63,212 bases of DNA, filler included, from Octopus bimaculoides (GCF_001194135.2; 3 parts of 3 records of this genome joined end to end with filler, not necessarily neighbours in it), one strand, 5' to 3'. Shown: positions 9,421-62,471, counted from the first letter of the whole stretch. Notes: a model not told the origin generated them from the sequence alone. Translations and numbers: made by a program.

Positions 9421-10716
9421 CTTATAAAGAACATTTTTTTAAACTTAATTTCAACTACCTCAAAGAACCGTAACACAATTCATAGGTTTTGGTAGGCAAA
9501 ATAAATAGGAGTTGGAATAGTAAATTTAAGATTGTATATAACACTGCTACTTTGGGAATAAACAATGAATTTGGGCAAAAAAAAAAAAAAAATCTCTTAC
9601 AAGTATATGAAATACAAGCAGAAATTATAAAACGAAGACGCGCAATGATAACTTAATAGGAATACTTAAACTGGAAACAGAATTCTCAAATATCACAGAA
9701 CATTTATTACTAAAGATGTATTAAATATGAAACAGACAGATGGAGTCAAATAAATTACAAAATAAATTCAGAAATTAATACAGAAAACATTCAAATTAAG
9801 TAAAACTACAGAGCATATGATATTTATGAATGCGACATAGAGCGATTCTTAATGAGACTCTATCCAATAGACTAGCTGGAAGCCACTGCCTACCATTATG
9901 ATGAGCGCACATTTGCTTATTTATAAAATGAAATATAATTATGTACCGTAAATGAAACGGAAAAATTCACTTTATCGATTTTCTGTCTATGCCATGTGGT
10001 TCCCAACATGGGTAACGCGTACCTCTGCTGGTTCGCAAAGTTAGTACCGTGTGTCTGTAATCTACATTCAAATTTCGCCAACCCTTATATATATATATAT
10101 ATATNNNNNNNNNNNNNNNNNNNNNNNNNNNNNNNNNNNNNNNNNNNNNNNNNNNNNNNNNNNNNNNNNNNNNNNNNNNNNNNNNNNNNNNNNNNNNNNN
10201 NNNNNNNNNNNNNNNNNNNNNNNNNNNNNNNNNNNNNNNNNNNNNNNNNNNNNNNNNNNNNNNNNNNNNNNNNNNNNNNNNNNNNNNNNNNNNNNNNNNN
10301 NNNNNNNNNNNNNNNNNNNNNNNNNNNNNNNNNNNNNNNNNNNNNNNNNNNNNNNNNNNNNNNNNNNNNNNNNNNNNNNNNNNNNNNNNNNNNNNNNNNN
10401 NNNNNNNNNNNNNNNNNNNNNNNNNNNNNNNNNNNNNNNNNNNNNNNNNNNNNNNNNNNNNNNNNNNNNNNNNNNNNNNNNNNNNNNNNNNNNNNNNNNN
10501 NNNNNNNNNNNNNNNNNNNNNNNNNNNNNNNNNNNNNNNNNNNNNNNNNNNNNNNNNNNNNNNNNNNNNNNNNNNNNNNNNNNNNNNNNNNNNNNNNNNN
10601 NNNNNNNNNNNNNNNNNNNNNNNNNNNNNNNNNNNNNNNNNNNNNNNNNNNNNNNNNNNNNNNNNNNNNNNNNNNNNNNNNNNNNNNNNNNNNNNNNNNN
10701 NNNNNNNNNNNNNNNN

Positions 10717-10756
<40 letters not shown>

Positions 10757-11332
10757 GCACACACACACGTCCACACACGCACGTACACACACATATATAT
10801 CGATATGTACATAGATATATAAATGGATGCGTTGATTAATAAGGAGAGAGAGAAGGTGGCTAAAAGAGTGAGATAGGGAGTGTGATAGTGATAATAGAAC
10901 GAGTGCAGCAAGACAAAAATCAGAACAACTACAGAGAAAACTCGATAAGTGGTTCGGTGGCCAATTAGACGCAACAAAGTAACTTAGACGTCAATAAAAA
11001 TACAGCATATGTTTTTGAGTAATTAAATCCTGATTTCTGTAAATATTAGCAGTTGGGGACATCAGTGAAAATATTTAACAGTTAATTTGTTGAAATTTCT
11101 ATATTTCACTCATAATGACAAGGAACACATACCCTTTTAGTGAGTCAAGAAAGTAGATATTTGAAGGAACAACCAAGGCAATGTGATTAAGAAGTTCGTT
11201 TTATAAACAATTGTTTGCTACCTAGCTAGATAGATAGACATGTAAATAGAGAGACATATAGATAGACAGAGAGATATATAGATAGACAGAGAGACAGATA
11301 AATGTATACATATATATATATATATATATATA

Positions 11333-34814: not shown

Positions 34815-34985
34815 CACACACACACATATGTATATACGACTGGCTTCTTTCAGTTTCCGTCTACTAAATCCAATTACAAGGCTTTGGTCGACCCGAGGCA
34901 AATACAGAACACACTTGCCCAAGGTCCCACGTAGTGGAACTGAACTCGGAACCATGTGGTTGGGAAGCAAGCTTCTTACCACACA
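34815..34985 (-). mobile_element. SINE family C head
   Basis: cgactggcttctttcagtttccgtctac..acacttgcccaagg..ggaactgaactcggaaccatgtggttgggaagcaagc. Confidence 0.8.
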
Positions 34986-39687: not shown

Positions 39688-39745
<58 letters not shown>

Positions 39746-39855
39746 TGCTATATCAATTTGAAAACACCTGTTCTCGTCCGGTCACCGAAGTTAATCAAAA
39801 TCGAACTTGTATTTATATGGACGAACCCTTGAGGAATCTAGGTGTTGTAAACATA

Positions 39856-42399: not shown

Positions 42400-42858
42400 C
42401 TATATATGGTGTCCATAAGCTCCCCATTTCAATAAAAATCTTTTACAATGTCCATAAAGTTCTTATATTAATGAAAATGCAGGATTTATGTTAACAGCAG
42501 TTAAAATAACTAGTATATGGAGAACCTGCCCTTATTAGGTTTAAAATGTTTGGAATAATCAGTGGATTAGATGTGGGTTTAACGGTACATGGCCAATCTG
42601 ATAGCCAGATCTAACCCCTTTCAGCTTCTTTACAAAAAGGTTTTATATCAAATTACAAGTCTACAAAACAAAGACTACTACCCTGCTCAAAATACTGAAA
42701 ATATCCAAGGATGGATTTTGGAAGGAGTTGAATAGTGTAGAGAAACCGTTGGCAACATATCGAACCATATTCTTCAAATAGTGCTACTAATGTTCAATTG
42801 TTATTTTTAAAATTTCCGTTGGTTTTAAATTGAATGGTTATTATATATGAACACCCTG
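42400..42858 (+). mobile_element. Degraded Tc1-like transposase 3' end with terminal repeat
   Basis: QWIRCG..TWP...PDLTPFSF (42558-42630), like WIGRGG..WPPRSPDLTPLDF; ends GAACACCCTG (42849-42858), the reverse complement of the CAGGGTGTTC terminus at 37738. Confidence 0.5.
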
Positions 42859-43800
42859 ATTTATTCAACGTGTTCTTATTTTAAGAGAACAAGTATGTAG
42901 TTTAAAAGGATATTTGACTGTGATGTGACAGAGTTTATACATTGCAAAGAGTGCCTCACTCGCTCCCAAGAGTTTAGAACAATTTCATGAGATTAGCAAC
43001 GGAAATTGGTGGAAAAAAAAAAACTAGACATGCATTCTAACCACAAACAAAACATTATCACAAGATTTGAACTTACGAACCAAAAGTGACATTTCTTTTG
43101 GGACAACTTAGTAGCAGCGGGTAGTTATGTTAATTTCAAGTGCATTGTTCACCGATGTAGTGGTTTGGCAAATGTTCGTTACTAAACACCTTTTGGGGTC
43201 ACCATAAACAAGTGAAATACATTGAACCACAATTATATGAATAGCAATAACGACCGACATGTATTGAAATGAACCCGGAAGGGGAAAGTAAAGCAAACCG
43301 CTGTATATTTGAACTAAGAACGTAAGGAATTGTGTCCGACTCTCTGCAGACATTGCCAGTCTACCTCTTTTAGTTGGTCACTAATATCGAACCAGTGATG
43401 GAACTTCTACATGCGACTTCACTTGCTAGAAACAGGAGCGATAAATTATCTCCAAAATCACATTCAACTGTCTTTATAAAAATGGAAGTGACACCTCGGG
43501 TAACATCCTGAATATTTCACCCCCGTCCATTTGCTGTAGGTACGGTATCGACTGATAATGTAGCCGAAATTTTGGTTTCGGATTTGATTACTGGTCGAGA
43601 TGACGCGGTCATTCGAGAATGGAAATACAATTACAATATAAAAATGACGGAACAAAATGTTGCAAGTTAAACATTTACTGTTTTTATTTTGAAGAAAATG
43701 GCGAGTGGAATGGTCATTAATATAGTTAGTGGTGATATGAACACGAATGTAAAAATATATAAAAATTATTTTAGAGTTCGACTAGTTTTCTTTCAAAATT

Positions 43801-43998
43801 TTAATGGAGTGGAATCTGTAGTTTAAAGAACTCAAACGAATTATACGAATCCCAAGCGAGAAAGATCGATTCTTCTTCATTCTCAACGAAAGGAGGAAAT
43901 GCAAAGTCAATGTCGGCAGGTTTTAGCAACCAGAAGGACTGGAACGAAATACGTCCAACCCTCTTATAATCCTGCCAGTCTGTCACCGAAATTGACCC
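43801..43998 (-). pseudogene. In-frame continuation of the orphan ORF beyond a single TAG (GSISVTDWQDYKRVG...KLQIPLH*)
   Basis: After TAG at 44001-43999 the same frame reads GGG TCA ATT TCG GTG... for 65 codons to TAA at 43803-43801. An AATAAA lies on the minus strand at 43688-43683. Confidence 0.5.
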
Positions 43999-44844
43999 CT
44001 AATACATAGGACCAATGAGGGGAACCCCAAGGTGGTGGTACAACCTTCTAGAAATAGAAGCGAAATCATACCTAATTGGCGCCATATTGGTGTTAAAAGA
44101 CGGAAAGAGTAAATCTCGGTACGTCTCGTGAAGAAGCCGAATAGTATTCAATGTCCAGTTGTCAGGGTGAGATTCCAAGTGGTCAACTATTAATGGAGGA
44201 AGAATGTGTCGAATGTTCCAAAGAAAATTTATGCATTCCTGAAAAGTGATCATCATATCCTCGATATCTTTGTGGACTGTACTCAGTTGCGCTTTTCTTA
44301 TGGCTATTGTGGTATTATTTGTACGGATTTCTTGGTAGTGAAGGATTTCTTCCAAGCCTGAACGATGCGGCATGTTCCGAAACCGTTCCCATGTTCGATT
44401 TCTAATGAAGTCAAGAATGTCCAACTTTAAATACACCAAAGTGATCGTATATGTATTATGTTTTGGATGAAAAATCTGCTGCGAAATTCGACGCATGTGA
44501 TTAGATGTTCGCAGGATCACAAATTTTGTGAGGTCTAAAATACTTGGAATACAATTGAGATCGGAAGGGGAGAGATATAGAAAAATATTGGTCAGTAAAT
44601 TTCTCTCGAGTGTACAATAATAGGGCGAATTGATTAATAAATGCAAAATGGCGAATTCTATGGTTTGAGTCAGTGGAATGTTTTCTTCGTATTTCAATTG
44701 ATTTAAAGAAGCCCTCACTTCATTAAAACCTCTCTTGAAAGTTTTGGACATTGATAATAATACATATTCAAAATAACCAACTGGTAACGGAAACTGACCT
44801 TCTATACTTTTTGCTACACCGTTCTTTTCTAAACACAAAGACAT
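43999..44844 (-). CDS. Orphan intronless ORF (281 aa, MSLCLEKNGV...LGVPLIGPMY) of unknown function; possibly viral/Polinton-like or an F-box-like orphan
   Basis: 846-bp stop-free frame with no microsatellite or SINE inside, protein-like composition, ATG at 44844 preceded by gaggaaa. The track's 344-aa ORF is inflated by the upstream gap and (TA)n. No family recognised. Confidence 0.6.
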   Translation of the reverse strand: MSLCLEKNGVAKSIEGQFPLPVGYFEYVLLSMSKTFKRGFNEVRASLNQLKYEENIPLTQTIEFAILHLLINSPYYCTLERNLLTNIFLYLSPSDLNCIPSILDLTKFVILRTSNHMRRISQQIFHPKHNTYTITLVYLKLDILDFIRNRTWERFRNMPHRSGLEEILHYQEIRTNNTTIAIRKAQLSTVHKDIEDMMITFQECINFLWNIRHILPPLIVDHLESHPDNWTLNTIRLLHETYRDLLFPSFNTNMAPIRYDFASISRRLYHHLGVPLIGPMY

Positions 44845-45099
44845 TTTCCTCTCTATACTCGTTTCAATAAAATAAATCCTTATATATATATATATATATA
44901 TATATNNNNNNNNNNNNNNNNNNNNNNNNNNNNNNNNNNNNNNNNNNNNNNNNNNNNNNNNNNNNNNNNNNNNNNNNNNNNNNNNNNNGTACACATTCAA
45001 ACCGATTAACTGCCAAATGGAAGAGTCTATCAAAAGGAAAATAGGTACGATATTTATAGGAATAACTCAACACTATAAACTACAGAAAAATTGGTAATT

Positions 45100-45310
45100 T
45101 CTTTACTGTGATTTCTAGCGTAGGTTTCAAAGCCTTACATTTTGAGAAAAGGGTAAAGTCAGTGATGATAACTCTTGTACTTGACTGGTACTTCATTTCA
45201 TCGATCCAAGTCAGATGAAAGTCTGTGTGTAACACAGTGTGATTTGAACTCAGAGAATATAGATTCGCATCCAAATACCACTCAAAAGATTTTGCCAATC
45301 CGTCGCAGCA
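45100..45310 (-). mobile_element. Diverged SINE family A copy
   Basis: gactggtacttcatttcatcgatcc...gatgaaagt...gatttgaactcagag. Confidence 0.55.
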
Positions 45311-45499
45311 CTGCAACAACGCTGATGAGTGTTTTGTGAGCTTGCAGCGATGAGTTCAAATCATTCTACAGCTTTGGCATGCACACCGTATGCATTCATA
45401 CATCTAGATTTTATTCTAGATTCTCAAAGGAAGGGAGTGTTCTAAGAAGCATCACACTGATTGCGAGACATACCATCTGTGCCATCATTAATTTTTGTT

Positions 45500-45730
45500 T
45501 TTAACGAGCCAATGAGGAAAACTCTATGTGATCAATTGATCGTTTAGAAATAGCAAACGAATCTCCCTAAAATGACAACCCTATCATCTTAGAAAAGAAG
45601 GGCACATTGGATACTATGATCTTAGGCACTGACTTCCTAGTAAAAATGTTGGGATGGTCGCGGTTGGAGTGTCTTTGATCACAGACAAAAGCAGAGCCAG
45701 GCTGATCCGAGGATAAGCAACAACAGTAAA
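45500..45730 (+). repeat. Dispersed short repeat family E (other copies near 23560-23650, 43370-43490, 46570-46800, 50360-50560, 63080-63150)
   Basis: Recurrent motif (g)ctagaaatagca..aaatctccctcaaatcaca..gtctt..aaa..ggg on both strands. Confidence 0.55.
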
Positions 45731-46009
45731 GACGACATGTATTTTAAATTTTACTTGAATCTTTAAAATATTTAGAGACGGTGAATTGGCACAATTGCTA
45801 TAGGGACTTTATGAGTTCACATCTCAGCAAGTTCGGTAACAATGCTGGGACCAGTTCTCTTTTCTTCACGTTAAACTCTTCGAAAATCACTCCTGCGTCC
45901 CAGTTTTCTATTCTAAGCTGAAGCAAAATTAATTTGACTGGTTTCACTGAATTCATTTTAGAACCGCATCAACGTCGTTACACCTTAAAAGGTTTGCTTT
46001 GTAGCTATT

Positions 46010-46320
46010 TGTTCTCAGGTCAGTCACCACCCGCCACCGCTTCTAGCTTACAGACGTGCTGTCTTTTCATTTTGTTTCTTTTAACGTCGCTTTTTTCTAG
46101 CAGTTATCTGGGATCGTACCACCTCCATGCATTTCCTCCTCTCACCAATCTACCCACTTCTGGCTCCACAGAATCAGCTTCGCCCAAATATTTCTTTCTC
46201 AGACAGTTTTCCCTCTGGAATTATCTTCTTGCTTGGCTACATTTTTCCTGCAGGCGTCAACTGGTAGATGTTCGAGAGGAACTCTAATCATGCCAATCTC
46301 ACCGGTCTCGTAGGAGCTGC
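46010..46320 (+). mobile_element. Degraded non-LTR retrotransposon ORF2 C-terminus (clade uncertain)
   Basis: LAYRRAVFS.CFF....ELSGIVPPP....DSF..LWNYL...FPAGVN..MF resembles the RR.VASL.LFY..CS.EL..VPP..SFFPRT..LWN.LP..FP motif. Confidence 0.45.
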
Positions 46321-47270
46321 AAAAGCTATAGGCACGGACTCCCCCCCCCATGAAGAAGCCTTTAAAAATAATCCTACAAAGATCTGTTTATATATGTAGA
46401 ATTTATTTCAGTTTAGACTTGAATATTAGTATTATAGAAGCAATTCCGCTAAACGTTATGAAATATCAAAACGTTGCTATTCTTTAGACTCAAGTCCTTC
46501 CTGATCGAGTAAAAACATGAACGGGTCTCAGGTGCTAACACATCATTCTTCTTTTCCAAGTCGAGTGCATTTAGGACGATATTGTTCCTCTTGTTTGTGA
46601 CAATGGATTGTGATTTAAGACAGATTTGGCTGGTGTTTCTAACAGTTCAAATGCACCACTGGCAGTCCTTGTTTGAAGATATTTGTTGTTGGTTACTTCA
46701 AGTTCAGATCTGATCGAGCAGACCTGTCTACTCTTTGACAATCCGTACTCGAATATATATACACGAATATATTATCCTGTTGAGACATCCCCTGCGAGAA
46801 TAGACTTGACCGAGTGACTATAAGTGGTAGCAGTCTGAGAGAGAGAGAGAGAGAGAAAGAAAGAAAGAGTTAATCTCTAGAAGTAGTAAGGTGTGGTTTT
46901 GGTAGTTTGTCGAAATATCGTTTGTTGGTTCGTGTATTGCTCGTGGAAAGTTTGTTGGCTTGTTACGTTGTTACTCTGCTTCGTTATATGTTTATTGTCA
47001 CTACACGGTTATAGTGTGAACAAGTATCGTCATAATTAGTGGCGATACTATAATAATTGGCGACGAGTAACCACGTTACAATATATTCAAATTGAGCTAT
47101 TTTAAGAGACAGAATGGTGTAATTTGAATATTTAGCCCCAAATCATCTCTGGTCGAGTAAATCTCTGCTAAAAGGCGTTCAAACCGTGATAAATCCGTCC
47201 TTCACACACACACAAACACACAGACACTTACATATGCACACATATATATATATGTGTGTGCATCTATCTA

Positions 47271-47416
47271 TAGGCATAGGCGTGGCTGTGTGATAAGAGA
47301 CCTGGTTCCCAATGCCATGATTCCGGACTCAGTCTAACTGCGTGGTATCTCGAGCAAGTGTCTTCTACTATAGTCTCGAACCGACCAAGGCCCTGTGAGT
47401 GGTTAAGCCTTGTATG

Positions 47417-47469
<53 letters not shown>

Positions 47470-52512: not shown

Positions 52513-53271
52513 CTGTGTGTGTGTATTTGTATGCGTGTATATAAATATTTTCTGTGTGCGTATAATTTCTATTTCTTCTCACGTTCGTAGATGAGATTTA
52601 GTTCTTACGTTCTTGTATTTNNNNNNNNNNNNNNNNNNNNNNNNNNNNNNNNNNNNNNNNNNNNNNNNNNNNNNNNNNNNNNNNNNNNNNNNNNNNNNNN
52701 NNNNNNNNNNNNNNNNNNNNNNNNNNNNNNNNNNNNNNNNNNNNNNNNNNNNNNNNNNNNNNNNNNNNNNNNNNNNNNNNNNNNNNNNNNNNNNNNNNNN
52801 NNNNNNNNNNNNNNNNNNNNNNNNNNNNNNNNNNNNNNNNNNNNNNNNNNNNNNNNNNNNNNNNNNNNNNNNNNNNNNNNNNNNNNNNNNNNNNNNNNNN
52901 NNNNNNNNNNNNNNNNNNNNNNNNNNNNNNNNNNNNNNNNNNNNNNNNNNNNNNNNNNNNNNNNNNNNNNNNNNNNNNNNNNNNNNNNNNNNNNNNNNNN
53001 NNNNNNNNNNNNNNNNNNNNNNNATATATATATATATATATGTGTGTATATATATATATATACATACATGTATATATACATATATGCATATATATATGTG
53101 TATACATACTTGTATATATACATACATGCATATATATATACATACATACACACACACATATATATATATATATATGCATATATATGTATATATATATATG
53201 TATATATATGTGTGTGTGCATAAATATACATATATATATGTATAAAGTATATATCATAGTATATTTCTATA

Positions 53272-53309
<38 letters not shown>

Positions 53310-53546
53310 NNNNNNNNNNNNNNNNNNNNNNNNNNNNNNNNNNNNNNNNNNNNNNNNNNNNNNNNNNNNNNNNNNNNNNNNNNNNNNNNNNNNNNNNNCG
53401 CGCACGCACTCATATAGACATATATGTACATGTAATTTATAGTTCTAGAAAGACATCTGAGAATGCTATGACTCAATGAAAAGACTCCATACATACAAGG
53501 AGTGTTGACTTCCATCAAAAAATACCTGACTAAACTCCTAAAATAT

Positions 53547-53810: not shown

Positions 53811-54485
53811 TTTATATATATATATATGTTGTTGTACTTGGGGATGGTCATATTGCCTGTTTAGCCAATAAAAACACACGCACTGTATATTTGGTGTTAA
53901 TTTGCTTCAGCTTTATATTACATTAATCTTAATCTTATTTTATATATATATATATATNNNNNNNNNNNNNNNNNNNNNNNNNNNNNNNNNNNNNNNNNNN
54001 NNNNNNNNNNNNNNNNNNNNNNNNNNNNNNNNNNNNNNNNNNNNNNNNNNNNNNNNNNNNNNNNNNNNNNNNNNNNNNNNNNNNNNNNNNNNNNNNNNNN
54101 NNNNNNNNNNNNNNNNNNNNNNNNNNNNNNNNNNNNNNNNNNNNNNNNNNNNNNNNNNNNNNNNNNNNNNNNNNNNNNNNNNNNNNNNNNNNNNNNNNNN
54201 NNNNNNNNNNNNNNNNNNNNNNNNNNNNNNNNNNNNNNNNNNNNNNNNNNNNNNNNNNNNNNNNNNNNNNNNNNNNNNNNNNNNNNNNNNNNNNNNNNNN
54301 NNNNNNNNNNNNNNNNNNNNNNNNNNNNNNNNNNNNNNNNNNNNNNNNNNNNNNNNNNNNNNNNNNNNNNNNNNNNNNNNNNNNNNNNNNNNNNNNNNNN
54401 NNNNNNNNNNNNNNNNNNNNNNNNNNNNNNNNNNNNNNNNNNNNNNNNNNNNNNNNNNNNNNNNNNNNNNNNNNNNNNNNNNNNN

Positions 54486-55460
54486 TTGCTGAAATACATC
54501 AAAAGTTTCATTAGAGACGATTCCGACATGCTAGAGCACTTACCAAAAACAATTAATGAAGAGGCATTATTGGTTTCTCTCGATGTTATCAATCTTTACA
54601 CCAACATCCCACATGAGTATGGAATAAAAGCAATCAAATTCTGGTTAGAAAAGTACCCCGAAGTGCTCCCGGAACGCATAAATCAGATCTTTCTTGTTGA
54701 ATCTTTAAAATTTATACTTCAGAACAATTATTTCCTATTTGATGACACATACTATCGTAAAAAATGCGGAATTGCGATGGGAACGAAAGCAGCCCCTGTT
54801 CTTGCGAACCTGATAATGGGTTATTTTGAATTCACCATATATGAGGTGTCACTTCAAAAATATGGTTATCCATTTTACTATTACATAAGAGAAAGCTGGA
54901 AAAGATACCTGGATGACTGTTTTATCATTTGGAAGGAGACCATTGGCAATATTTTGGACTTCAAATCAACACTAAATGATATAAATAGTAACTTTCAATT
55001 CACAATGGAATATAGCAAAGAACAGCTCCTATTTTTAGATATTAAAAAAGTCAACAACCAAATTATAACTGATATCTATCATAAACCAACGGACTCGAAG
55101 CACTATCTTCTCTTTAGCTCATGCCACTCGAAATACGTCAAAATAAACATTCCCTTTAATTTGGCAGAAGGAATTAGTGTCTGATAGAACTACTCGGGAC
55201 CTTCGTCTTCAAGACCTCAAAACAACACTAACTGAAAGACAATATCCACCTTCACTTATAGACGATGGAATTAAGTGTTCTAAGAAATTAGACATAAAAA
55301 CACTAAGGACAACAAAGCATAACACCACACCACATCTCAAAACACTACTGTATATATCAATTTACAACCATAGAAACAATGAGGCATTCAACACTATTGT
55401 GCAAAATCTCCCTCTATTAACTAGAGACCCAAATATGAACAACATCCTGAAAGCGCATAA
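54486..55460 (+). mobile_element. Penelope-like element reverse transcriptase fragment, 5' end lost in the gap
   Basis: LVSLDVINLYTNIP, NNYFLFDDTYY..GIAMGTKAAPVLANLIMGYFE, WKRYLDDCF (~54906), FTMEYS...FLDI, TDIYHKPTDSKHYL; frameshift near 55180, then RQYPPSLI thumb region. Confidence 0.93.
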
Positions 55461-55578
55461 TTTTAATATGCTGGCCACTGATAAAATTTAAAAAAAATAT
55501 GTTTTTAAGCTTTATATAACGTACATGTGCTTTCACAAGCTGATCGACATACTTCCAAGGTATTAAAAGCACCCCCAC

Positions 55579-61341: not shown

Positions 61342-62471
61342 TGATCAATAAGTATCCGGATTTTTTTAATAGTAGCGAAGCTAAAGCACGCAGAGTAAAG
61401 CTACTCAGGCACTGGTTGACCTTGAACTCTGCTGTGCATGCGCACTAAGTGTTAACGTTCTAGCTCACTTCCGCTGTTTACAGTNNNNNNNNNNNNNNNN
61501 NNNNNNNNNNNNNNNNNNNNNNNNNNNNNNNNNNNNNNNNNNNNNNNNNNNNNNNNNNNNNNNNNNNNNNNNNNNNNNNNNNNNNNNNNNNNNNNNNNNN
61601 NNNNNNNNNNNNNNNNNNNNNNNNNNNNNNNNNNNNNNNNNNNNNNNNNNNNNNNNNNNNNNNNNNNNNNNNNNNNNNNNNNNNNNNNNNNNNNNNNNNN
61701 NNNNNNNNNNNNNNNNNNNNNNNNNNNNNNNNNNCTGTGCATGCGCACTAAGTGTTAACGTTCTAGCTCACTTCCGCTGTTTACAGTAGTGCTTGGAATG
61801 AGGGTATGTAGCGTGTGATCGTCGCAATGACCATGACAGAAAATTGAGCAGAGAATCTGCATCAAATTTTGCTAAAAGCCTGGCGACACCTGCTCAGAGG
61901 CCTGCGCAAAGTTTTAAAAAAGTTTTTACCGTTCTCGATACAATCTCTTGCAACTGAAACCCGAGTTTTTGTAAAATAGTTTTGGCAGACACGCATCTCA
62001 TATCCAAATCTTCAGTGATAATGAAGTGAAGTAAACCGTAACTAATCTGCACATTCACCGATAACTTACGGATGGTGATTTGACGATTTCTCCTCGCAGC
62101 TGCACGCACATCTGCGATATTTTTCTCAGTTGTGCTTGTTGTGGGTCGTCAATATTGACACTTTTTCGGCCATCTTGGAAACGTCTGAACCTCACTCACA
62201 CTTGTGTGAAGCTCACACTCCTCTCCATATACTTTCTGCAACTTTGCGAAGGCTTCTCAGCAGGTGTCGCCATGACAACTTTCTCTGTCATGGTCAATGC
62301 GACAATCACAAGTTACACACCTTCCTTCCAAACACTGCTGTAAATAGCGGAAGTGAGCTAGAACGTTAAAACGCATGCACAGCAGAGTTGAAGATCAGTC
62401 TTTGCCAATCGGCTTCTCTTTGCGTGACTCAGCTTTGTTACTATGGCAACAATCCGGATACTTATTGATCA
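61342..62471. mobile_element. Non-autonomous mariner derivative made of two inverted 5' ends
   Basis: TIRs TGATCAATAAGTATCCGGA (61342-61360) and TCCGGATACTTATTGATCA (62453-62471). Left arm (+) encodes MTE..EQRICIKF...GDTCSE. Right arm (-) encodes MTEK..FAKLQKVYGEE..WFRRFQDGRKSV..RQITIRKLS..ISYG..IITEDLDMRCVSAK (mariner HTH region). Confidence 0.88.

What the first reader, a model, noticed from the sequence alone, without database searches (positions are those of the whole stretch)
43999..44844. Unexplained 281-codon intronless ORF: candidate endogenous viral element or orphan gene
Seen: 846 bp without a stop, free of microsatellites, with a globular helical-looking composition and no RT, integrase, transposase, gag-knuckle or helicase motif that I recognise. 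At an assumed ~65% AT, stop codons are ~7% of triplets, so a random 281-codon frame has probability of order 1e-9 per start; the frame is therefore coding-derived. Its intronless, compact layout among TE debris suggests DNA-virus/Polinton-adintovirus cargo, an RNA-virus EVE, or a lineage-specific retrogene. I cannot assign it.
Basis: partly seen in the sequence, partly recalled or inferred. Interest (0 to 1): 0.7.

Follow-up and report, generated by a model that had tools for sequence, protein, structure and literature searches.

The report
Unannotated single-exon cephalopod orphan gene
The open reading frame is real and sits on the minus strand; it is most likely an intact, intronless host gene from a small, fast-evolving protein family so far seen only in octopods and a few unidentified relatives, and nothing links it to a virus or transposon.

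Summary
A 281-codon ORF runs from the ATG at 44844 to the stop at 43999-44001, on the minus strand. It contains no microsatellite and is far longer than chance allows (simulated maximum 157±24 codons).

The ORF is not an isolated orphan. A full HMMER scan of 1.84 billion proteins found two relatives that align along their whole length:
- a 262-aa 'hypothetical protein' of the octopod Argonauta hians (E 7e-28), encoded by a single exon;
- a 260-aa clade (E 6.5e-11) from many Tree-of-Life-type sequencing runs, plus one 524-kb contig.

In that second clade dN/dS is 0.15-0.25, and the coding sequence is conserved while its flanks are not. The window copy keeps ancestral residues as well as the Argonauta gene does.

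No Pfam, PHROG, PDB, IMG/VR, BFVD, prokaryotic-genome or metagenome relative was found. There are no terminal repeats, no second copy, and no viral or TE genes beside any of the three genomic copies.

The best reading is a lineage-restricted, single-exon host gene for a soluble, mostly helical protein. A winged-helix-like module is a low-confidence hint. Expression, copy number and function were not tested. The result is ordinary but adds a useful annotation.

The parts
43999..44844 (-). Complete single-exon coding sequence: ATG at 44844-44842, 281 codons, TAG stop at 44001-43999. A at -3 relative to the ATG.
   Evidence: ORF and sequence; chance statistics; start and end match the full-length homologues
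44104..44799 (-). Family core, residues 16-247: the stretch that aligns colinearly with the Argonauta hians protein (its residues 15-244) and with the 260-aa clade.
   Evidence: E 7.1e-28 and 6.5e-11; 25 invariant columns across 6 sequences; tblastn
44428..44667 (-). Predicted winged-helix-like module, residues 60-139: helix, short strand, helices, then a long beta-hairpin at residues 117-126 and 130-139. Low confidence.
   Evidence: AlphaFold2 with a 6-sequence alignment; block pLDDT about 47-75 here; best but non-significant Foldseek hits are winged-helix-containing proteins
44107..44358 (-). C-terminal helical region, residues 163-246: one 48-residue helix and two or three shorter ones. This is the most confidently modelled part.
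   Evidence: block pLDDT 66-87
44881..44988 (.). Upstream boundary: (TA)n microsatellite at 44881-44905, directly followed by an assembly gap of 83 N at 44906-44988. The gap begins 62 nt upstream of the ATG and hides the promoter region.
43683..43688 (-). First AATAAA on the coding strand downstream of the stop, about 310 nt away. It is a possible polyadenylation signal, supported by pattern only.

Best explanation
The ORF is an intact, single-exon, protein-coding host gene. It belongs to a small, taxonomically restricted and rapidly evolving family. Known members are this window (octopod-like genome), Argonauta hians, and a second clade of at least four related genomes whose taxon is unidentified.

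Shown:
- The frame is real.
- It is full length relative to its homologues.
- The family is under purifying selection where that can be measured.
- The family has no detectable viral, TE or prokaryotic relative.

Inferred:
- The product is a soluble intracellular protein of about 30 kDa. It has no signal peptide, no transmembrane segment and no classical nuclear localisation signal.
- It is built mostly of alpha-helices.
- It has a central winged-helix-like module (three or four helices plus a long beta-hairpin), followed by a long helix and a small helical C-terminal bundle.

My best guess at mechanism is that the protein acts as a binding or adaptor protein. The winged-helix-like module would contact a partner (protein or nucleic acid), and the long helix would mediate self-association. 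I put this mechanistic part at only about 25%. The 'genuine lineage-restricted host gene' part I put at about 80%.
For: ORF and chance:
- 281 codons against a simulated maximum of 157±24.

Homologues:
- P0001 (GAB1607794.1, Argonauta hians 'hypothetical protein', 262 aa): E 7.1e-28.
- P0002 (260 aa): E 6.5e-11.
- These were the only hits among 1.84 billion representative proteins.
- A profile search added P0006, on a 524-kb contig.
- All members align from the first methionine to about residue 250, with 25 invariant columns.
- All genomic copies are uninterrupted ORFs: the Argonauta gene is 789 bp in one piece on a 28.9-Mb scaffold, and L015 carries ORF 10019-10798.

Selection:
- dN/dS is 0.15-0.22 at dS of about 0.09, and 0.22-0.25 at dS of about 0.75-0.84, within the 260-aa clade.
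- Between L002 and L015 only the CDS and about 80 nt upstream still align. Among the three closest genomes the CDS is about 96.5% identical (27 differences in 783 nt), against 88-90% over the whole contigs.
- Relative-rate test: the window has 22 unique changes and Argonauta 25, with P0002 as outgroup (chi-square 0.19). The window copy is therefore not decaying faster than the annotated gene.

Single copy:
- No paralogue lies within ±10 kb in any of the three genomic loci.
- No second copy of 42500-46500 exists in the piece.
- A search with P0001 found only P0001 itself, so no Argonauta paralogue was seen.

Possible conserved locus:
- A 5S rRNA gene or relic lies 4-8 kb downstream on the opposite strand in both the window and Argonauta.

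Protein features:
- Maximum Kyte-Doolittle (19-residue window) is 1.07-1.50, with no hydrophobic N-terminus.
- The best Foldseek hits are TFIIE-alpha, RPC3 and the N-terminal domains of plant O-methyltransferases. All contain winged helices, but none is significant.
Against: Gaps in the evidence:
- No expression evidence. The Logan contigs break at A-runs and TA-runs and show no poly(A) tails, so they may be genomic.
- The exact protein is not among the genes called in the public collection, so nobody has annotated it there.
- The promoter is hidden by an assembly gap.
- Copy number in the source genome could not be measured.
- The taxon of the 260-aa clade is unknown.

Weak points:
- Window versus Argonauta is only 28-32% identical, with saturated synonymous sites (pS 0.70, pN 0.50). 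Constraint on this particular copy therefore rests on its intactness and on the rate test.
- The structure model is weak: mean pLDDT 58, pTM 0.46, from 6 sequences.
- No Foldseek hit reaches E<=0.001.
- pI is near neutral to mildly basic and there are no basic clusters, which argues against a classical DNA-binding factor.
Confidence: 0.72

Rival explanations
1. Endogenous viral element or cargo of a Polinton/adintovirus-like or other DNA virus: a viral gene captured in the genome, intact by recency or by co-option.
For: The gene is intronless and compact, and the protein has no cellular homologue outside a narrow clade. BFVD gives only generic small helix-turn-helix phage proteins at E 0.04-0.2.
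Against: No relative turned up in:
- IMG/VR;
- PHROGs;
- BFVD at E<=0.001;
- JGI metagenome contigs;
- 185,579 prokaryotic genomes.

No ORF with a viral or TE Pfam domain lies within about 10 kb of the window, Argonauta or L015 copies, apart from one distant RT fragment. The family is single copy per locus and colinear across at least 5 genomes, with dN/dS of about 0.2.
Confidence: 0.04
2. Accessory or domesticated ORF of a cephalopod transposable element: a non-catalytic TE protein, possibly co-opted.
For: The genome around it is repeat-rich. It holds SINE-like copies, an RT fragment at 54486-55184 and microsatellites. Single-exon genes of unknown origin are often TE-derived. This last point is general knowledge and was not tested here.
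Against: There are no TIRs, LTRs or direct repeats bracketing the ORF between 40000 and 49000. No transposase, integrase or RT domain is present. There is no second copy in the piece and no Argonauta paralogue. Flanks of more than 2 kb are colinear among three related genomes, which suggests a stable locus.
Confidence: 0.08
3. Still-open but functionless relic: a family member that lost function recently in this species and has not yet acquired stops.
For: It is not annotated in the public gene collection. It has a C-terminal extension of about 20 residues that no homologue shares. There is no expression evidence. dN/dS against Argonauta is uninformative because synonymous sites are saturated.
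Against: All 281 codons are open while every other frame has 14-22 stops. The start, length and 25 invariant family positions are retained. The relative-rate test shows no acceleration.
Confidence: 0.1
4. Retrogene: a processed copy of an intron-containing parent gene.
For: The coding sequence is intronless.
Against: All homologues found are themselves uninterrupted ORFs, so the intronless state appears ancestral to the family. No poly(A) tract lies within about 800 nt downstream. No multi-exon relative was detected among 1.84 billion proteins.
Confidence: 0.04
5. Chance open frame in AT-rich DNA.
For: None beyond its existence.
Against: About 1e-4 such frames are expected in the piece, and homologues score E 7e-28.
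Confidence: 0.005

Closest known systems
GAB1607794.1, 'hypothetical protein Ahia01_001063300' of Argonauta hians (assembly GCA_054771915.1; genome described in bioRxiv 10.1101/2025.05.16.652989)
   Same: It aligns colinearly over residues 16-247 (E 7.1e-28, 28-32% identity). It has the same N-terminal start and similar length (262 versus 281 aa), and is a single uninterrupted ORF. A 5S rRNA gene lies a few kb downstream on the opposite strand.
   Different: It is very divergent. The window protein has about 20 extra C-terminal residues. Flanking DNA shares only repeats. Orthology versus old paralogy is not settled.
Unnamed 260-aa clade (P0002-P0006): Logan contigs from ERR3431203, SRR8281669, ERR12921336, ERR12408770 and others, plus ENA metagenome-type assembly ERZ21867824
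   Same: The family architecture and length are the same, and the ORF is uninterrupted. Purifying selection is measurable, with dN/dS 0.15-0.25.
   Different: Identity to the window protein is only 23-25%. The taxon is unknown. These loci carry a conserved upstream block with an ATGCAAAT octamer that is not seen near the window or Argonauta genes.
Cephalopod taxonomically restricted gene families (reflectins, suckerins, histidine-rich beak proteins, unnamed clade-specific arrays; Albertin et al. 2022, PMC9068888)
   Same: It is a lineage-restricted protein family with no similarity to known proteins. It is the same kind of object that paper describes as 'novel gene formation'.
   Different: Those families are clustered in tandem arrays and have biased, repetitive composition. 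This one is single copy per locus and looks like an ordinary globular helical protein.
Winged-helix proteins such as TFIIE-alpha and RNA polymerase III subunit RPC3 (extended winged helix)
   Same: These are the best Foldseek matches, and they share a helix-helix-helix-hairpin module.
   Different: The matches are not significant (E 0.07-0.3, TM 0.16-0.26). There is no sequence-profile match to any PDB chain or Pfam family. This is a resemblance only, not membership.

Membership tests
Uncharacterised family defined here (window ORF / Argonauta GAB1607794.1 / P0002-P0006) | Significant full-length sequence similarity | tested here: met
   E 7.1e-28 and 6.5e-11 against a 1.84-billion-protein library, covering residues 16-247 and 20-245. 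Reciprocal tblastn confirms it.
Uncharacterised family defined here (window ORF / Argonauta GAB1607794.1 / P0002-P0006) | Shared start, length (about 260-280 aa) and invariant positions | tested here: met
   There are 25 invariant columns in 6 sequences, including the initiator Met. Lengths are 260, 262 and 281 aa, and about 260 aa for the real ORF in L015.
Uncharacterised family defined here (window ORF / Argonauta GAB1607794.1 / P0002-P0006) | Uninterrupted (single-exon) coding sequence | tested here: met
   Window; Argonauta 789-bp gene; L015 and the Logan contigs.
Endogenous viral element / Polinton-adintovirus cargo | Homology of the protein to a viral protein | tested here: not met
   PHROGs gave 0 hits. 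IMG/VR gave 0 confirmed loci. BFVD Foldseek gave no hit at E<=0.001.
Endogenous viral element / Polinton-adintovirus cargo | Linkage to viral hallmark genes (capsid, pPolB, integrase, ATPase, protease) | tested here: not met
   ORFs of at least 100-120 aa within about 10 kb of the three genomic copies have no such Pfam domains. Smaller or degraded remnants were not searched exhaustively.
Transposable-element protein | Catalytic or structural TE domain (RT, integrase, transposase, gag) | tested here: not met
   Pfam gave 0 families at E<=10 for the window protein and only noise for the relatives.
Transposable-element protein | Terminal repeats around the gene | tested here: not met
   Only microsatellite-derived repeats were found between 40000 and 49000.
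Transposable-element protein | Multiple dispersed copies in the genome | not testable with these tools
   The source genome is not available. Within the 28-kb piece and the two 20-kb homologous loci there is one copy each.
Retrogene | Intron-containing parent gene | tested here: not met
   No other relative was found among 1.84 billion proteins, and all relatives are uninterrupted ORFs.
Retrogene | Poly(A) remnant and target-site duplications | tested here: not met
   No A-tract lies within about 800 nt downstream of the stop, and no flanking direct repeats were found.
Winged-helix fold | H1-S1-H2-H3-S2-wing-S3 topology in a confident model, with a significant structural match | tested here: inconclusive
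   The topology is present in the AF2 model, but block pLDDT is only 47-75 there. The top Foldseek hits contain winged helices but score E 0.07-0.3.
F-box proteins (considered because residues about 79-110 look superficially F-box-like) | Match to an F-box profile | tested here: not met
   No Pfam F-box family was reported at E<=10 for the window protein or any relative.

The most novel reading that the evidence does not exclude
The family is a previously undescribed, cephalopod-born (or anciently domesticated) intronless gene. It would encode a new type of winged-helix or coiled-coil regulator, kept at a conserved locus next to a 5S rRNA gene since before the split of argonauts and benthic octopods, and present across coleoids.
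Probability: 0.12. Interest if true: 0.55.

Novelty: new member of a known kind. Interest (0 to 1): 0.3.

Why it matters
The finding adds a probable missing gene model to an octopod genome. It also defines a small protein family with no Pfam entry, no structure and no named member.

Such lineage-restricted genes are the raw material invoked for cephalopod innovations (PMC9068888). Most are known only as arrays of biased-composition proteins. A single-copy, globular-looking family under purifying selection is a cleaner case for asking where new genes come from.

It also shows that an intronless unassignable ORF in a repeat-rich genome should not be read as an endogenous virus by default.

Beyond that it is an ordinary annotation result. 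No function is known and nothing about it is mechanistically surprising yet.

Tried and rejected
Searches that found no relative:
- Single-sequence word-indexed protein search: no hits. It missed relatives that full HMMER later found.
- Pfam, PHROGs, and PDB by sequence and by profile: nothing significant.
- Exact-sequence lookup of the window protein: not on record.
- IMG/VR, JGI metagenome and prokaryotic genome scans: no relatives. One call failed for lack of a conserved stretch.

Structure:
- Single-sequence AlphaFold2 was unusable, with pLDDT 36.

Synteny and repeats:
- DNA or tblastx synteny between the window and Argonauta or L015 flanks showed only repeats and a 5S element.
- A TIR/LTR search found only microsatellites.
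- The bacterial-type promoter/terminator scan is not meaningful for a eukaryote.

Expression:
- I tried to show expression from the Logan contigs. They end at genomic A-runs and TA-runs, not poly(A) tails, so expression is not shown.

Taxon of the second clade:
- I tried to identify the taxon behind the sequencing runs from the literature. Exact accessions were not found.
- Prefixes only show that the runs belong to Sanger Tree-of-Life series.
- The one cephalopod genome note found (Sepioteuthis lessoniana) lists different runs.

Ideas dropped:
- F-box-like motif: no profile support.
- MAGE-like tandem winged helix and Hop2/Mnd1-like architecture: considered from memory only. No named hit came back from any search, so these are not claimed.
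- Treating the 66 further open codons after the stop as part of the gene: rejected, because all homologues end about 20 residues before the window protein's own stop.

Full report

Yes, on the minus strand. The ORF listing and direct translation show an ATG at 44844 and a TAG at 44001-43999, with 281 sense codons between them.

Read on the plus strand, the same coordinates are full of stops. The other five frames across the ORF contain 14-22 stops each.

With the piece's own base composition, 6.9% of triplets are stops:
- P(281 open codons) is about 1.9e-9 per start.
- About 1e-4 such frames are expected in the whole 28.4-kb piece.
- In 200 second-order Markov simulations the longest open run averaged 157±24 codons, with a maximum of 235.
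- The observed run is 301 codons, because the frame stays open upstream into a (TA)n tract and an N gap.

The ORF itself contains no tandem repeat. The only one nearby is (TA)12.5 at 44881-44905.

**2. What is it related to?**

The first searches were empty:
- Pfam at E<=10, PHROGs, and PDB sequences returned nothing meaningful.
- The fast word-indexed protein search returned nothing.

The exhaustive HMMER scan of 1.84 billion representative proteins found exactly two relatives:
- P0001, E 7.1e-28, 262 aa.
- P0002, E 6.5e-11, 260 aa.

[quoted passage not shown] Its gene is a single 789-bp piece on a 28.9-Mb scaffold of GCA_054771915.1. That assembly is described in bioRxiv 10.1101/2025.05.16.652989.

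P0002-P0005 are near-identical 260-aa proteins on 1.2-3.1-kb Logan contigs from more than a dozen sequencing runs.

A profile search added P0006, on a 524-kb contig of ENA assembly ERZ21867824. There the true ORF is L015:10019-10798, about 260 aa. The deposited 289-aa product reads through a stop.

All members align from the initiator Met to about residue 250, with 25 invariant columns. The window ORF is therefore a complete family member, with an extra unshared C-terminal tail of about 20 residues.

**3. Is the family a functional gene?**

Within the 260-aa clade the answer is yes.
- Three closely related genomes give dS of about 0.09 with dN/dS 0.15-0.22.
- Comparison with the more distant L015 gives dS 0.75-0.84 with dN/dS 0.22-0.25.
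- Among the three close genomes the whole contigs are colinear at 88-90% identity, while the CDS is about 96.5% identical (27 differences in 783 nt).
- Against L015 only the CDS and about 80 nt upstream still align.

For the window copy itself the closest relative is too distant. Identity to Argonauta is 28-32%, with pS 0.70 (saturated) and pN 0.50. I therefore used a relative-rate test with P0002 as outgroup:
- The window lineage has 22 unique changes and the Argonauta lineage 25 (chi-square 0.19).
- The window keeps 47 of 165 positions fixed in the outgroup clade, against 43 for Argonauta.

The window copy is thus no more decayed than the annotated Argonauta gene. Together with the intact full-length frame, this makes an active gene the most likely state. 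It is an inference, not a demonstration.

**4. Virus, transposon or retrogene?**

None of the defining features was met.

Viral origin:
- No relative in IMG/VR viral contigs.
- None in JGI metagenome contigs.
- None in 185,579 prokaryotic genomes.
- No BFVD structural match at E<=0.001.

Gene neighbourhood:
- ORFs of at least 100-120 aa within about 10 kb of the window, Argonauta and L015 copies are microsatellite or tandem-repeat artefacts without Pfam domains.
- The single exception is a weak reverse-transcriptase fragment at 54486-55184, 9.6 kb away on the other strand.

Mobile-element features:
- No TIRs, LTRs or bracketing direct repeats between 40000 and 49000.
- No second copy of 42500-46500 in the piece.
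- No paralogue within ±10 kb at any locus.
- No Argonauta paralogue retrievable.

Retrogene features:
- No poly(A) remnant within about 800 nt downstream.
- No intron-containing relative anywhere.

One positive hint of a stable, possibly orthologous locus did emerge:
- In Argonauta a bona fide 5S rRNA gene (105 bits) lies 8.0 kb downstream of the gene, on the opposite strand.
- In the window a degraded 5S copy (39.5 bits, about 80% identical over the 5S body) lies 4.1 kb downstream, also on the opposite strand.
- A SINE-like repeat follows in the same order and orientation. That repeat has at least 6 copies in the Argonauta locus, so it carries little weight.
- I cannot estimate the genomic density of 5S-like copies, so this is suggestive only.

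**5. What might the protein do?**

Sequence features:
- No signal peptide or transmembrane segment (maximum Kyte-Doolittle 1.07-1.50).
- No basic clusters in three of the four proteins checked.
- pI 6.5-8.9.

Structure prediction with AlphaFold2 on the 6-sequence alignment is weak overall (mean pLDDT 58, pTM 0.46). It is best over residues about 120-250, with blocks up to 87. It predicts:
- helices at 24-54, 60-72, 80-90, 93-98 and 102-116;
- a long beta-hairpin at 117-126 and 130-139;
- helices at 142-157, 163-210 (48 residues), 217-224 and 232-246.

The segment 60-139 has winged-helix topology. The hairpin is plausible from sequence, because alternating hydrophobic residues surround a tight turn in all clades.

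Foldseek against the PDB gives no significant hit. Its top matches (E 0.07-0.3) are TFIIE-alpha, Pol III RPC3 and the N-terminal domains of plant O-methyltransferases. All of these contain winged-helix domains.

I therefore commit, at about 25% confidence, to a binding or adaptor role. The winged-helix-like module would bind a partner, and the long helix would mediate self-association. The lack of basic patches makes protein binding at least as likely as DNA binding. This is inference from a weak model.

**6. Comparison with what is known, and novelty**

The closest known object is an unnamed 'hypothetical protein' of Argonauta hians. There is no Pfam family, solved structure or literature description that I could find.

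As a kind, it matches the taxonomically restricted genes reported for coleoid cephalopods (PMC9068888). It differs from the well-known examples (reflectins, suckerins) in being single copy and of ordinary composition.

I rate it a new member of a known kind: a lineage-restricted single-exon gene. It is apparently missing from the gene calls of the collection searched.

**7. Limits**

- The source species of the window is not known to me. Octopod affinity is suggested by shared repeats with Argonauta at 76-88% identity and by Argonauta being the closest protein relative.
- The taxon of the 260-aa clade is unidentified. The run prefixes belong to Sanger Tree-of-Life series. The 'ctg...l' contig name fits the metaMDBG host-plus-microbiome assemblies used for cephalopods in that programme. 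Neither observation proves the taxon.
- Expression, genome-wide copy number and promoter structure could not be examined. The promoter is hidden by the N gap at 44906-44988.

**8. Verdict**

The EVE/Polinton interpretation is not supported, and the 'orphan gene' alternative is supported.

Confidence in the 'real host gene' core is about 0.8, and 0.72 for the statement as a whole. Interest is 0.3: a useful annotation and a clean small orphan family, but nothing that would surprise a specialist.

Noticed in passing
window 39740-39853 (+); L001 18828-18947 (-): The window has a degraded 5S rRNA copy (39.5 bits, gathering threshold 38) embedded in (TA)n/(CA)n microsatellites. The Argonauta locus has an intact-looking 5S gene (105 bits). 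In both, the 5S lies a few kb downstream of the family gene on the opposite strand, which may be micro-synteny.
   Followed up: partly
window 54486-55491 (+): A reverse-transcriptase-like ORF fragment matches PF00078 at E 4.4e-5, below the gathering score. It is followed by a second short ORF and is truncated on its 5' side by the assembly gap at 53958-54485. This is a retroelement remnant unrelated to the finding.
   Followed up: partly
window 34836-34944 (also about 47287-47454); L001, at least 6 copies: A SINE-like repeat of about 110 nt is shared with Argonauta hians at 77-88% identity, in both orientations. It is the only non-coding similarity between the two loci besides the 5S element.
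   Followed up: no
window 43801-43998 (-): After the ORF's stop codon the same frame stays open for another 66 codons, which has roughly a 1% chance by composition. No homologue extends this far, and all end about 20 residues before the window protein's stop. It is probably chance or a lineage-specific 3' feature.
   Followed up: partly
L003 about 80-130 and L015 about 9830-9880 (upstream of the homologous genes): A block of about 50 nt containing the octamer ATGCAAAT is conserved about 140-190 nt upstream of the ATG. The two genomes have coding dS of about 0.8, and the surrounding upstream DNA is not conserved. It is a candidate promoter element of the 260-aa clade. It is not seen near the window or Argonauta genes, but the window's upstream region is hidden by an N gap.
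   Followed up: partly
L015 10001-10870: The deposited 289-aa product (P0006) does not translate exactly from the DNA under the standard code, because it reads through a stop. The real ORF is about 260 aa, like its relatives. This is a gene-calling artefact in a metagenome-style assembly of host DNA.
   Followed up: yes
window 52621-53023, 53310-53398, 53958-54485, 61485-61734, 44906-44988: There are five assembly gaps (83-528 N), most of them flanked by TA/CA microsatellites. Many of the 'long ORFs' in the piece are artefacts of N runs or microsatellites.
   Followed up: no
L001 14341-15246 (-) and 2911-4100: The Argonauta flank contains long open frames made of imperfect tandem repeats (His/Thr/Pro/Gln-rich). 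They have no real Pfam domain and are low-complexity DNA rather than genes.
   Followed up: partly
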